From Hemiscyllium ocellatum (Eukaryota): a stretch of DNA of 64,000 nucleotides. The stretch covers positions 12,907,363-12,971,362 of the forward strand of contig NC_083433.1 of the NCBI RefSeq assembly GCF_020745735.1, given 5' to 3'. Positions 34,783 to 37,700 of the stretch are shown here, piece after piece. The notes below the pieces were generated by a model. The model was given only the letters and a program-made list of their open reading frames with translations. It was not told the DNA's origin and did no database searches. The position numbers were made by a program, and so were the translations under genes. The first letter of the stretch is position 1. Every line of letters begins with the position of its first letter.

Positions 34783-37700
34783 CTAACTGCTGTCCTCCAG
34801 TGAGAGCCTGTCAAACAGGTACTCTCCCAGCCCATTCTCAGGAGCTCCCAGACGCTTCAGGTTGGTGATGTAGTCCCCAAGTTGCTTGATGATCTCAACC
34901 TCCTCATCCAAATAGTGGGTCTCCAGGAAGTCACACAGCTGGAACACAGGAATATTACAGCTCATTACATTAGCACAAAGTGAATTATAGAATTTCCACT
35001 ACAAAACAGTGTGCCCAAAATGTCAACTCTTGCTCCTTGGTTGCTGCCAGACTTGCTGCACTTTCCCACTGAGCCTTCAGCATCAATATTAATAGCTCTA
35101 GATATTAGAGTTTGCTAGACTTTTCAGGAATATGTGCTGGTGAGGACAATACCTTTCAGCTGGCTCATCTTGCTGTTTCTAACTGGAGCCCGCTGTATGT
35201 GGTGTTCAGTGATCAGTCCACTGTAATGGTCCTGAAAGGGGATTCAGTGGCCAAGAACCACTTCAGCACTCACCAGATTACAATCAAAGTTGTTCCTCGA
35301 CTTTATTGAGGAATTGTAACATTGTAAACATCAGCATGATCTGGAATGATCAATGTTACATCTGGAAAAAGTGCTGGATTACTGAACTTCAAACCCACAA
35401 AGACCAAAGACCAACCAGTGAGGTGTTGCCCAGAGGGTGTGGCAGTGATGAGAATGAGGAGGTGGTGGTGAAGCTTACATGAGGGTCAGTCTGGGCAGTG
35501 GCGAGTTGGTGTAGATCCAGCAAACTCTGGTTCACATTCTTCTCCAGATCCAGGGCAACCTGCATTGCCTGCAGACCGTTACCCCACTCATCCCTCTCTG
35601 GCTTCTGAAACAAAAAAAAGGACAGATCAGTTATTTGAGAGCTACATCCACCTTGGCGATGTGGCTGGTCTGAAGCAGGAAGTTCAGGAACAGGTCATTG
35701 TTGAGATCAGGATTAAGTTTTACAAAAAAATGCTTTGAATCAGTGTCCATTTGAGAACTTAGATCAGGATAGTCACATCCTTATCTTGGCACAATAACCA
35801 TTGTGTCCCACCTCTTGTCCACAAGGTGCAGTCCCACTTGCCAAGTACATGGATTAAAAGTGTGCATGCAATTCAATTGAGGGACAGCAAAATGTTTACA
35901 ATAAAAGATTTGGATACAAGGTCATAGATCCCAGAACCATTCAGTACAGGTAGATTGGGTGAAGGTGGGATGCAGGAGTTGTGGCATTGAATGTAGGAAT
36001 AAGTCCTGCTTTACAAAGCAGTGAAAAATCCATTAGGACAAAGGAACACTGGCTCTGGCCACCACACTACAAGGATGGCATTGCACTGGAGGAGGTTCAG
36101 ATGAGATTCAGCAGGATGTTGCACAAGATGGAAAATCCATTGAGGGGAAAGACTGGATGTTTTATTGGAACAGAGGTAGATGGGGTTATCTGATTGGACA
36201 GTAGTGAGAATCTCTTCCCCATGGCAGACAGCAAGACTAGAAAGCACAGGTTTAGGCATCAGTATGTTGGGGAAAGCTTCCTCAACAGAGTGGTAGAAAT
36301 ATGGAATGCATCACCTGATGAGTGGAGGCAGCTAGTGCAGTGACATTCCAGCAGCATTGGACAGATACTTCATATCCAGGGTGTAGTGGTCTAAGGACCA
36401 ATTGCAGGTAGATGGGATTAGTGTAGTTTGGTGTTGATTGGTCAGCACAGACTAAAGGGCCTGTGTCTATGCTGTGACTTGGAGATGGAGAAGATCATTG
36501 GGGAAGCCAAACAGAAGACCTTGTCACTTCCCCATCAGGATGTGATAACCTAGTCACTGACTTAAAGCCACATCACGAGAGCAGCCATTCCTCCCCCTCC
36601 ATCCCCAACATTCCCACCTTCACATCCTGGAGGAGGACTCTGCCTCCACGCTGATTCTGGAATTTCAACAGCTTCTCTGCATGTTCCTGCTTCTCCTGGG
36701 AGAGAGCTTTGAAGAACTGGGAGAAGTGGTGCAGGGCAACATCATCCTGGTCAAAGTAGGACATCTGAAAGAGAACCATTTCCATCCCATTAACACCTGG
36801 GCCCAATTCTAGTTTAAAGTAAAAAGTCCTCTTTAGGGGTCTAAAAAAATATGCTCAATATGAAGTCAGATTTATTGACTATGGAAGATCATTAAAGTGA
36901 AAAAGCAACTGTTTGAAAATGGAGCTTGACAAGCATTCAAGTCCAGTAAACAAAACTACAATTTTGCACTGAATTAGGGAAACAATTGTATTATTTGTTC
37001 ACAAGTAGAAGTTGAACACTGATCGTTTTGTAAGTGTAAGGATGAGAAATATCAAGTGGAAATTAAAGTCACTTCTAGCCAAGCGATTAGACTTTAGGCC
37101 TTTGACCATTTGGTCAAATTTGGAGAAAGTGAGGACTGCATATGCTGGAGATCAGAGTCAGGAGATACAGCTGGTCAGGCAGCATCCAAGCAGCAAGAGT
37201 CAACATTTTAGACAATGTGATAAGCCCTTCCTGAAGTGCTTTTGCCTAAAAAAAAAATCAATTCTCCTGCTCCTCAGATGCTGCCTGACTTGTACTTTTC
37301 CAGCACCACTCAATTTGGTCAAGCTGGACAATTCCTACTCCACAACAGTAGGAGAACACCTTCAAGTTTAAGGTAGCCACGATGGTACTGTAAGGAAAAA
37401 ATGAGGTCTGCAGATGCTGGAGATCACAGCTGCAAATGTGTTGCTGGTCAAAGCACAGCAGGTTAGGCAGCATCTCAGGAATAGAGAATTCGACGTTTCG
37501 AGCATAAGCCCTTCATCAGGAATAAGAGAGAGAGAGCCAAGCAGGCTGAGATAAAAGGTAGGGAGGAGGGACTAGGGGGAGGGGCGATGGAGGTGGGATA
37601 GGTGGAAGGAGGTCAAGGTGAGGGTGATAGGCCGGAGTGGGGTGGGGGCGGAGAGGTCAGGAAGAAGATTGCAGGTTAGGAGGGCGGTGCTGAGTTGAGG

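What the first reader, a model, noticed from the sequence alone, without database searches (positions are those of the whole stretch)
37393..37523. Hammerhead ribozyme motif inserted in sense orientation in a ferritin intron
Seen: the Penelope 3' terminal repeat reads AUUC-CUGAUGA-A-GGGC(UUAU)GCUC-GAAAC-GUC^GAAU on the minus strand. This is a complete type I hammerhead core with predicted cleavage between 37492 and 37491. Ferritin copy 4 is on the same strand, so its pre-mRNAs would carry the motif in intron 1. Known: Penelope-like elements carry minimal hammerheads whose palindromic stem III (here ACGU) favours cleavage as dimers. Inference: cleavage could depend on transcript concentration or on a partner hammerhead RNA in trans, which might modulate expression of this ferritin copy.
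Basis: partly seen in the sequence, partly recalled or inferred. Interest (0 to 1): 0.82.

Follow-up and report, generated by a model that had tools for sequence, protein, structure and literature searches.

The report
Penelope retroelement hammerhead in ferritin intron
The hammerhead ribozyme motif is real, but it is the standard minimal ribozyme at the tail of a truncated Penelope-like retrotransposon that landed in a ferritin intron, one of a great many such copies in this genome, and nothing indicates that it regulates ferritin.

Summary
Observation confirmed. The minus strand 37523-37488 reads AUUC-CUGAUGA-A-GGGC(UUAU)GCUC-GAAA-CG-UC^GAAU, a complete type I minimal hammerhead with cleavage predicted between 37492 and 37491. 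My descriptor finds 4 such motifs in the window and none in 200 shuffles.

The motif lies 134 nt downstream of an RT + GIY-YIG ORF. It is the 3' module of a 2.35-kb, 5'-truncated Penelope-like element (39745-37393, 9-bp target-site duplication). The element sits in sense orientation in the 4,136-nt intron 1 of an intact ferritin gene (copy 4).

It shows every hallmark of the metazoan PLE min-HHR described by Cervera and de la Pena (2014): an extra base between positions 9 and 10.1, a G10.1-C11.1 pair, palindromic 15.2/16.2, and a 4-bp helix I.

About ten related tail copies lie in this 64-kb window. The older ones have dead cores. Summed contig depth over the PLE bins is 10^3-10^4 times that of unique flanks. 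The scan holds 338 notes with these words, the listed ones all from this genome, and one follow-up (s1-188222) reached the same reading on other DNA.

The regulatory inference is unsupported:
- The insertion is specific to copy 4 and young.
- The trans helix III is only 4 bp.
- Published min-HHRs barely cleave.
- Exon 2 lies only 727 nt downstream.
- The available RNA contigs carry the copy 1-3 letters.

Verdict: an ordinary member of a known kind.

The parts
37488..37523 (-). Minimal type I hammerhead: helix I AUUC/GAAU, core CUGAUGA, extra A, helix II GGGC(UUAU)GCUC, GAAA, palindromic CG, U16.1, C17. Predicted cleavage between 37492 and 37491.
   Evidence: Read directly. Descriptor hit with 0 hits in 200 shuffles.
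37393..37523 (-). 3' terminal module of the PLE (hammerhead plus about 95-nt tail ending ...CCTCATTTTTTCCT). The same unit occurs as solo and fold-back mini-insertions elsewhere.
   Evidence: BLAST of the tail against the window. Alignments. Contigs lose likeness at 37523 and 37396.
37393..39745 (-). 5'-truncated Penelope-like element, 2.35 kb, GC 0.58.
   Evidence: TSD at both ends. Depth drops to unique level beyond about 39746, and other genomic copies continue past that point. Length and GC.
37657..39745 (-). PLE-derived part of the 735-aa ORF: DKG motif, RVT_1 (aa 202-377), CX4CX2C linker, GIY-YIG (aa 613-647). Codons 1-40 (39864-39746) are flanking intron DNA read in frame by chance.
39746..39754 (-). 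Target-site duplication, 5' copy (TACAGTACC).
37384..37392 (-). Target-site duplication, 3' copy (TACAGTACC).
36765..40900 (-). Intron 1 of ferritin copy 4 (4,136 nt, GT..AG). It shares nothing with intron 1 of copies 1-3 except about 30 nt at the acceptor and about 16 nt at the donor.
40901..41002 (-). Ferritin copy 4, exon 1 coding part ([34 protein letters not shown]).
36618..36764 (-). Ferritin copy 4, exon 2. It starts 727 nt downstream of the predicted cleavage site.
   Evidence: Exon joins seen in spliced RNA contigs of related copies.
35479..35604 (-). Ferritin copy 4, exon 3.
34783..34938 (-). Ferritin copy 4, exon 4 coding part with stop. The whole ORF is 176 aa and intact.
37122..37311 (-). 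Degenerate fold-back copy of a related tail family in the same intron. Its hammerhead core is destroyed (CTTCAGGA..CACATTGTC).
3741..3898 (-). Solo hammerhead-plus-tail mini-element with a short inverted 5' piece. The hammerhead (3871-3836) is intact. The 15-bp TSD lies at 3726-3740 and 3899-3913, and the site is empty in ferritin units 2-4.
42844..42941 (+). Solo copy, 100% identical to 37426-37523, with an intact hammerhead, on the opposite strand.
34379..34552 (+). Fold-back insertion made of two inverted tail pieces that start 6-7 nt 3' of the cleavage site, so it carries no hammerhead. The 15-bp TSD lies at 34364-34378 and 34553-34567, and the site is empty in copy 1.
57926..57962 (-). 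Minimal hammerhead of a different family: GCAC-CUGAAGA-A-GGAG(CAGCA)CUCU-GAAA-GC-UA^GUGC.

Best explanation
The motif is the minimal, dimer-dependent type I hammerhead that canonical endonuclease-bearing Penelope-like elements (PLEs) carry in their terminal module.

Shown: a PLE RNA was reverse-transcribed at a nick in intron 1 of ferritin copy 4. This produced a 5'-truncated, 2.35-kb copy in sense orientation with a target-site duplication. The copy has no upstream terminal repeat, so its hammerhead can only be transcribed as part of the ferritin pre-mRNA or of read-through RNA.

Inferred: in the element's own cycle the hammerhead acts, if at all, on longer-than-unit transcripts in which two hammerheads pair through the palindromic ACGU to build helix III, probably helped by the element's protein. 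In this intron there is one intact hammerhead with no partner in cis. It should therefore stay essentially uncleaved and leave with the spliced-out intron. It is a passenger that will decay neutrally, like the older copies nearby.
For: Motif and cleavage site: read directly. Significance.

PLE identity: RVT_1 and GIY-YIG in one ORF, with the DKG motif and a CX4CX2C linker read from the ORF.

Insertion anatomy: 9-bp TSD TACAGTACC at 39754-39746 and 37392-37384. Depth falls to unique level beyond 39746, while other genomic copies continue past it.

Family behaviour is that of PLEs as described in PMC8557442: heavy 5' truncation, inverted 5' pieces and variable short 3' ends. There are about ten tail copies in the window. 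Two have 15-bp TSDs and empty sites in paralogous ferritin units.

All min-HHR hallmarks of PMC4209133 are present.

Variants keep the structure. Helix II is GGGC/GCUC, GGGC/GCCU, GGGC/GCCC or GAGC/GCUC. Position 7 is U, A or C, while the rest of the core is fixed in intact copies. A second family has fully different helices I and II with the same architecture.

Passenger status: the insertion is absent from copies 1-3. Older copies carry C3A, G12/A13 changes or deletions. The PLE bins lie 10^3-10^4-fold above unique depth. The scan holds 338 notes with these words, the listed ones all from this genome.

Weak activity is expected: PMC4209133, PMC6765202 and PMC11167929 (a protein-assisted ribozyme; no RNA-seq reads ending at the site in Anolis).
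Against: No cleavage assay or RNA end mapping was possible. All the runs offered are stored as contigs, which cannot show ends.

PLE-derived RNA appears abundant in RNA runs of this animal, so trans partners exist in principle.

The expression of copy 4 could be neither shown nor excluded.

The thermodynamic predictions ignore proteins and tertiary contacts.
Confidence: 0.88

Rival explanations
1. The intronic hammerhead cleaves the ferritin copy 4 pre-mRNA when it finds a partner hammerhead RNA, either at high transcript concentration or with PLE RNA in trans. This lowers or tunes the output of this ferritin copy.
For: The motif is intact and in sense orientation in the intron. PLE-family RNA is plentiful in runs that are probably RNA. 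Intronic self-cleaving ribozymes can modulate their host gene, as the CPEB3 ribozyme does (PMC10919898). Dimer dependence of PLE hammerheads is established (PMC4209133, PMC6765202).
Against: - The trans contact is a 4-bp ACGU/ACGU helix of -1.7 to -3.1 kcal/mol before any initiation penalty.
- There is no second intact hammerhead in the intron. The neighbouring copy at 37122-37311 is dead.
- Published min-HHRs cleave not at all as monomers and only weakly as dimers (PMC4209133).
- Exon 2 lies 727 nt downstream, so cleavage would have to occur within seconds to tens of seconds to pre-empt splicing. The CPEB3 ribozyme, with a half-life of 2-3 min, has 9,931 nt (PMC10919898). Slow hammerheads in introns leave splicing intact (PMC2995048).
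- The insertion is specific to copy 4 and young, so there is no sign of selection.
- The same units sit in many other introns of this genome.
Confidence: 0.04
2. The sequence is hammerhead-like by descent but does not act as a ribozyme in vivo in this family. It is kept in master copies because the same nucleotides serve another step of retrotransposition, such as binding of the RT or marking the end of the template RNA.
For: In Anolis, hammerhead mutants did not change PLE insertion in vitro, and no RNA-seq reads ended at the cut site (PMC11167929). Large PLE clades thrive without hammerheads (PMC8557442). Here the pile-up of genomic copy ends is at the 5' edge of the hammerhead (37523; 52 DNA contigs), and none is listed at the cleavage site. 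Four window copies start within 3 nt of that edge.
Against: The pattern of variation is what ribozyme function predicts. The core is invariant except at position 7, pairing is preserved in helices I and II across families, and 15.2/16.2 is palindromic. PLE hammerheads do cleave in vitro as dimers or with the element's protein (PMC4209133, PMC11167929).
Confidence: 0.2
3. If the insertion affects ferritin copy 4 at all, it does so by ordinary transposon-in-intron effects: a longer, GC-rich intron, cryptic splice sites, or small-RNA or chromatin silencing aimed at the PLE. RNA self-cleavage plays no part.
For: 2.35 kb of high-copy, 58% GC repeat lies in a 4.1-kb intron. Intron 1 of copy 4 is wholly different from that of copies 1-3. 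The RNA contigs covering exon 2 carry the copy 1-3 letters at six diagnostic sites.
Against: All splice sites are canonical and the 176-aa ORF is intact. There is no AATAAA or ATTAAA inside the PLE on the sense strand. Contigs drop rare variants, so the lack of copy 4 contigs does not show silence.
Confidence: 0.12

Closest known systems
Minimal hammerheads (min-HHR) of metazoan Penelope-like elements (Cervera and de la Pena 2014, PMC4209133; Lunse et al. 2017, as cited in PMC6765202)
   Same: Type I topology. A 4-bp open helix I. An unpaired base between A9 and G10.1. A G10.1-C11.1 pair. No helix III hairpin, but a palindromic 15.2/16.2 (ACGU). Location just 3' of the RT-EN ORF. Many dispersed solo copies, and pairs on opposite strands.
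   Different: Nothing essential. Helix II is 4 bp, whereas the Schistosoma families described have 7-8 bp. This copy has no upstream repeat because it is 5'-truncated.
Canonical EN+ PLEs of the Neptune/Nematis type (Arkhipova 2006, as summarised in PMC8557442)
   Same: A single ORF with DKG motif, RT and C-terminal GIY-YIG. A Cys-rich CX4CX2C linker before the endonuclease. 5' truncation, inverted 5' pieces, variable short 3' ends and target-site duplications.
   Different: Clade assignment rests on the linker motif alone. No phylogeny was made.
Non-LTR retrozymes and solo monomers derived from PLE terminal repeats (PMC7229834; bioRxiv 10.64898/2026.07.22.740005)
   Same: Short non-coding units with a type I hammerhead related to PLE terminal repeats, dispersed as monomers. 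About 43% of the Xenopus copies are intronic.
   Different: Here the unit is attached to a PLE body, and there is no tandem array at this site. The metagenome contig L002 does show a 103-nt tandem with the same helix II.
[quoted passage not shown]
   Same: A self-cleaving motif in sense orientation inside an intron of a protein-coding gene.
   Different: The CPEB3 ribozyme folds as a monomer with a half-life of minutes, and its self-scission is reported for mouse, chimp and human (PMC10919898). The amniote intronic hammerheads are described as ultraconserved in the title of the cited paper. This motif is a young, copy-specific transposon passenger without a stable helix III.

Membership tests
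Hammerhead ribozyme (catalytic core) | C3 U4 G5 A6 N7 G8 A9 ... G12 A13 A14, an A15.1-U16.1 pair, and H17 (not G) before the cut | tested here: met
   CUGAUGA ... GAAA-CG-U-C^G, read.
Hammerhead ribozyme (catalytic core) | Three helices around the core, formed within one molecule | tested here: not met
   Helices I (AUUC/GAAU) and II (GGGC/GCUC) can form. Helix III is only A-CG-U with no loop, so it needs a second molecule. The MFE folds do not give the ribozyme fold.
Rfam hammerhead models | Score at or above the gathering threshold | tested here: not met
   No hammerhead hit at the gathering threshold over the window, nor at E<=10 over 37000-38000. This is expected, because these models include a helix III hairpin.
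PLE minimal hammerhead (PMC4209133) | [quoted passage not shown] | tested here: met
   The A at 37512. It is also present in all variants and in the second family.
PLE minimal hammerhead (PMC4209133) | A G10.1-C11.1 pair and a palindromic 15.2/16.2 | tested here: met
   GGGC...GCUC gives G10.1-C11.1, and C15.2-G16.2 gives ACGU. The second family has GC in that place.
PLE minimal hammerhead (PMC4209133) | Families with covariation that keeps the helices | tested here: inconclusive
   The pair 10.2/11.2 is G-U, G-C or A-U. The pair 10.1/11.1 is G-C or G-U. Helices I and II are fully different yet complementary at 57962-57926. Helix I is GCU/AGC in L001 and L002. There are too few independent sequences for a statistical test.
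PLE minimal hammerhead (PMC4209133) | Location in the terminal repeat of a PLE | tested here: met
   134 nt 3' of the stop codon of the RT/GIY-YIG ORF, inside the TSD-bounded insertion.
PLE minimal hammerhead (PMC4209133) | Self-cleavage as a dimer | not testable with these tools
   Needs transcription and cleavage assays. The runs offered are contigs only.
EN+ Penelope-like element | RT and GIY-YIG endonuclease in one ORF, with the N-terminal DKG motif | tested here: met
   RVT_1 at E 2.3e-07 (31.2 bits, above the 29.6-bit cut-off). GIY-YIG at E 1.6e-04 (22.3 bits, just under the 22.6-bit cut-off). KPADKGG is read in the ORF.
EN+ Penelope-like element | Pseudo-LTRs at both ends | tested here: not met
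   There is no tail copy between 39746 and 40885. This copy is 5'-truncated, which is usual for PLE insertions (PMC8557442).
EN+ Penelope-like element | Insertion signatures: TSD, 5' truncation, adjacent inverted 5' pieces | tested here: met
   A 9-bp TSD here and 15-bp TSDs at two sister insertions. Fold-back copies at about 3871, 34450, 47304 and 60345.
Host-regulatory intronic ribozyme (CPEB3-like) | Kept at the same site in paralogues or orthologues | tested here: not met
   Absent from intron 1 of ferritin copies 1-3. Orthologues could not be examined.
Host-regulatory intronic ribozyme (CPEB3-like) | Self-scission fast enough to compete with splicing, and an effect on the host mRNA | not testable with these tools
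   Only 727 nt to exon 2. Published min-HHR rates are very low (PMC4209133).

The most novel reading that the evidence does not exclude
Sense-strand minimal hammerheads scattered through introns are silent on their own. When PLE transcripts, or the PLE protein that assists cleavage, become abundant, they are cleaved. A burst of transposon expression would then lower the output of many host genes, ferritin copy 4 among them.
Probability: 0.03. Interest if true: 0.8.

Novelty: new member of a known kind. Interest (0 to 1): 0.15.

Why it matters
The motif adds one cleanly bounded example of a PLE minimal hammerhead, in a genome where such units are extremely numerous. The example has a target-site duplication and sister insertions with empty sites in paralogous gene copies. 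It does not open a new question about ferritin or iron regulation.

The locus has modest practical value as a natural test bed. Four near-identical ferritin genes differ by young PLE-derived insertions, so copy-specific expression could show whether a sense intronic min-HHR has any cost.

A more interesting side issue for PLE biology is the sharp pile-up of copy 5' ends at the first base of helix I.

Tried and rejected
- Rfam: cmscan at the gathering threshold on the whole window, and at E<=10 on 37000-38000, gave no hammerhead. This is uninformative for a motif without a helix III hairpin.
- RNA ends at 37491/37492: both run searches returned only runs stored as contigs (one search failed as busy). 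Read laying therefore could not show molecule ends, strand or level. Its table of begin and end places is empty.
- Copy 4 expression: the spliced ferritin contigs laid on the stretch carry the copy 1-3 letters at six exon-2 sites. This is neither proof of silence nor of expression.
- MFE folding of 181 nt and of 461 nt: no ribozyme fold. The z-score was -0.86 for the short stretch. The -4.1 of the long stretch comes from the neighbouring fold-back element.
- Cofolding of two copies cannot represent the dimeric hammerhead because it is not nested, so only the 4-bp helix III was evaluated.
- Empty site for the PLE: this was sought in the paralogous introns, but intron 1 of copy 4 has no counterpart in copies 1-3. 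The boundaries rest on the TSD and on depth.
- A polyadenylation signal inside the PLE as an alternative effect: none found.
- ORFs near the second hammerhead family and the old PLE remnant gave no Pfam hit.
- The paper of Lunse et al. is not held. Its content is cited through PMC6765202.
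Full report
**1. The observation**

On the minus strand, 37523-37485 reads ATTC CTGATGA A GGGC TTAT GCTC GAAA CG TC GAATTC. In hammerhead numbering:
- Helix I is AUUC/GAAU.
- The core is C3-A9.
- One unpaired A precedes helix II.
- Helix II is G10.1-C11.1, G-U, G-C, C-G, closed by UUAU.
- Then come G12 A13 A14, A15.1, C15.2, G16.2, U16.1 and C17.

The open helix is helix I, so the motif is type I.

I wrote a descriptor that demands a 4-bp helix I, CUGANGA, at most one extra base, a helix II of at least 4 bp, GAAA, a 2- or 4-nt palindrome and UH. 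It gives four hits in the window and none in 200 dinucleotide-preserving shuffles. The 28-nt core occurs three times exactly and twice with three mismatches, against none expected.

Rfam reports no hammerhead, either at the gathering threshold or at E<=10 around the site. Those models include a helix III hairpin that this motif lacks.

**2. What surrounds it**

A 735-aa ORF (39864-37657, minus strand) ends 134 nt upstream of the motif. It carries RVT_1 and GIY-YIG. It also shows a KPADKGG (DKG) motif and a CX4CX2C stretch just before the endonuclease. RT plus a C-terminal GIY-YIG defines the endonuclease-bearing Penelope-like elements. The Cys-rich linker is the mark of the Neptune/Nematis type (PMC8557442).

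The insertion is bounded by a 9-bp direct repeat, TACAGTACC, at 39754-39746 and 37392-37384. The element is therefore 39745-37393, about 2.35 kb.

Contig depth in a DNA run of the same animal falls from 10^5-10^6 to unique level just beyond 39746. Contigs of other genomic copies continue past that point with a shared sequence. This copy is therefore 5'-truncated. The first 40 codons of the ORF are flanking intron DNA read in frame by chance. There is no upstream terminal repeat.

**3. The host gene**

Four ferritin genes lie on the minus strand about 10 kb apart. Copy 4 has these parts:

| Part | Coordinates |
|---|---|
| Exon 1 CDS | 41002-40901 |
| Exon 2 | 36764-36618 |
| Exon 3 | 35604-35479 |
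| Exon 4 CDS | 34938-34783 |

All introns have GT..AG, and the ORF of 176 aa is intact. Intron 1 is 40900-36765 (4,136 nt) and contains the PLE in sense orientation. The predicted cleavage site lies 727 nt upstream of exon 2.

Intron 1 of copies 1-3 is about 2.8 kb and 87-92% alike among them. It shares nothing with intron 1 of copy 4 beyond some 30 nt at the acceptor and 16 nt at the donor.

**4. The family**

BLAST of the 3' module against the window finds about ten copies:
- Intact hammerheads at 3871-3836 (-) and 42844-42879 (+). The latter is 100% identical to this copy over 98 nt.
- Variants with CUGAAGA and helix II GGGC/GCCU at 44204-44177 (-) and 60346-60373 (+).
- Dead copies: at about 49400 (GAAAC changed to AUAAU), about 47300 (C3 changed to A), about 42075 (the box and half of helix II deleted) and 37122-37311.

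The changes among intact variants are what a hammerhead allows. Position 7 is U or A, and it is C in a metagenome relative. The pair 10.2/11.2 is G-U, G-C or A-U. The pair 10.1/11.1 is G-C or G-U.

A second family at 57962-57926 has entirely different but complementary helices I and II. It has the same extra A and a GC palindrome. Two metagenome contigs, L001 and L002, carry the same helix II with helix I GCU/AGC. L002 has it in a 103-nt tandem.

Two sister insertions can be compared with empty sites in paralogous ferritin units:
- 3741-3898 has a 15-bp TSD.
- 34379-34552, a fold-back of two tail pieces, also has a 15-bp TSD.

Several copies are fold-backs with an inverted 5' piece. Heavy 5' truncation, adjacent inverted 5' copies and variable short ends are the published signature of PLE insertions (PMC8557442).

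**5. Genome-wide view**

In contigs of DNA and probable RNA runs of the same animal, the PLE bins lie three to four orders of magnitude above the unique flanks. These figures are summed contig depth, which is not a copy number. One of the RNA-guessed runs is truly RNA, because it holds a spliced ferritin contig.

Fifty-two DNA contigs lose likeness exactly at 37523, the first base of helix I, and continue with unrelated sequences. No pile-up is listed at 37491/37492.

The scan's own index holds 338 notes with the words hammerhead, Penelope and ribozyme. The eight it listed are all from this genome and include dense populations in other genes' introns. One follow-up (s1-188222) reached the same reading on a different piece. 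I treat these as leads. My own counts are those above.

**6. Comparison with what is known**

Cervera and de la Pena (PMC4209133) list the features that recur in metazoan PLE min-HHRs:
- a base between positions 9 and 10.1;
- a G10.1-C11.1 pair;
- palindromic 15.2/16.2;
- a helix I of 4-5 bp;
- location in the terminal repeats;
- mostly solo copies from truncated elements;
- sometimes pairs on opposite strands.

All are met here. They found no cleavage of single motifs and only low cleavage of dimers or trimers, mostly at non-physiological Mg2+.

Frangieh et al. (PMC11167929) found that the Anolis PLE hammerhead needs the element's protein and is dispensable for insertion in vitro. They saw no RNA-seq reads ending at the cut site.

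Craig et al. (PMC8557442) note that the function of these hammerheads is still unclear.

**7. The regulatory inference**

For cleavage to change ferritin output it must happen before the spliceosome commits.
- Intronic cleavage by a slow hammerhead leaves splicing intact, whereas a fast ribozyme blocks it (Dye 2006 and Fong 2009, as summarised in PMC2995048).
- The CPEB3 ribozyme, with a half-life of 2-3 min, has 9,931 nt to the next exon (PMC10919898). Here the distance is 727 nt.
- The intron holds no second intact hammerhead.
- A trans partner could hold on only through ACGU/ACGU, at -1.7 to -3.1 kcal/mol.
- Predicted folds of 181 and 461 nt do not form the ribozyme, and the minimum-energy fold pairs the CUGAUGA box elsewhere.
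- The insertion is young and specific to copy 4, and older copies in the window have decayed.
- The spliced ferritin contigs in the RNA runs carry the copy 1-3 letters at six diagnostic exon-2 positions. Expression of copy 4 is therefore not shown, but contigs cannot show its absence either.

**8. Verdict**

The object is an ordinary member of a known kind, and its presence in a ferritin intron is most likely without consequence.

One point stays unexplained and is mildly interesting for PLE biology. The 5' ends of so many short copies fall on the first base of helix I and not at the cleavage site. [quoted passage not shown]

Noticed in passing
window 37523 (minus strand); also 3871, 42844, 49400, 44211: The 5' ends of short copies fall on or within 3 nt of the first base of helix I. 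There are four such copies in the window. Genome-wide, 52 DNA contigs lose likeness exactly at 37523 with unrelated continuations, and RNA-guessed contigs of the same animal and of a related species do so as well. No such pile-up is listed at the cleavage site.
   Followed up: partly
window 3741-3898 and 34379-34552: Two young PLE-tail mini-insertions with 15-bp target-site duplications have clean empty sites in the paralogous ferritin units, so the family was active after the ferritin tandem duplication. The second is the palindromic insertion noted as s1-148417. Its arms are tail sequence starting 6-7 nt 3' of the hammerhead cut site.
   Followed up: yes
window 60271-60472, 47226-47367, 37122-37311: Fold-back copies in which an inverted tail piece is joined to a direct copy near the CUGANGA box or helix II. 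In RNA they would form long hairpins that compete with the hammerhead fold. The 461-nt fold has z = -4.1, driven by the fold-back element at 37122-37311.
   Followed up: partly
window 36765-40900 versus 7049-9875, 16784-19773, 26820-29778: Intron 1 of ferritin copy 4 has no similarity to intron 1 of copies 1-3, which are 87-92% alike among themselves. The rest of the 10-kb unit is about 90% alike in all four. The origin of this replacement is unexplained.
   Followed up: partly
window 36668, 36702, 36703, 36726, 36748, 36759: Six exon-2 positions set copy 4 apart from copies 1-3, except that copy 2 shares the copy 4 letter at 36748. Spliced ferritin RNA contigs of this animal and of a related species carry the copy 1-3 letters.
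   Followed up: partly
window 57926-57962 (minus strand): A minimal hammerhead of a different family, GCAC-CUGAAGA-A-GGAG(CAGCA)CUCU-GAAA-GC-UA^GUGC. The neighbouring 270-aa ORF (59016-58204) has no Pfam hit.
   Followed up: partly
L002 3-213; L001 3783-3809: Metagenome contigs of unknown eukaryotes carry hammerheads with the same helix II and loop (GGGCUUAUGCUY) but a different helix I. In L002 they form a 103-nt tandem of two units, like a small retrozyme.
   Followed up: partly
window 37380-39900 in runs of organisms B-H: DNA and probable RNA runs of several other coded organisms hold 20-38% of the exact 31-mers of this stretch. A ferritin contig of organism F matches the exons here at about 96-100%, so these are probably close relatives sharing the family.
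   Followed up: no
window 40125-40715: Another high-copy repeat lies in the same intron. In other genomic places, a sequence like 40191 onward abuts the hammerhead 5' edge directly. This joint, 37521 to 40191, is seen in both DNA and RNA contigs.
   Followed up: no
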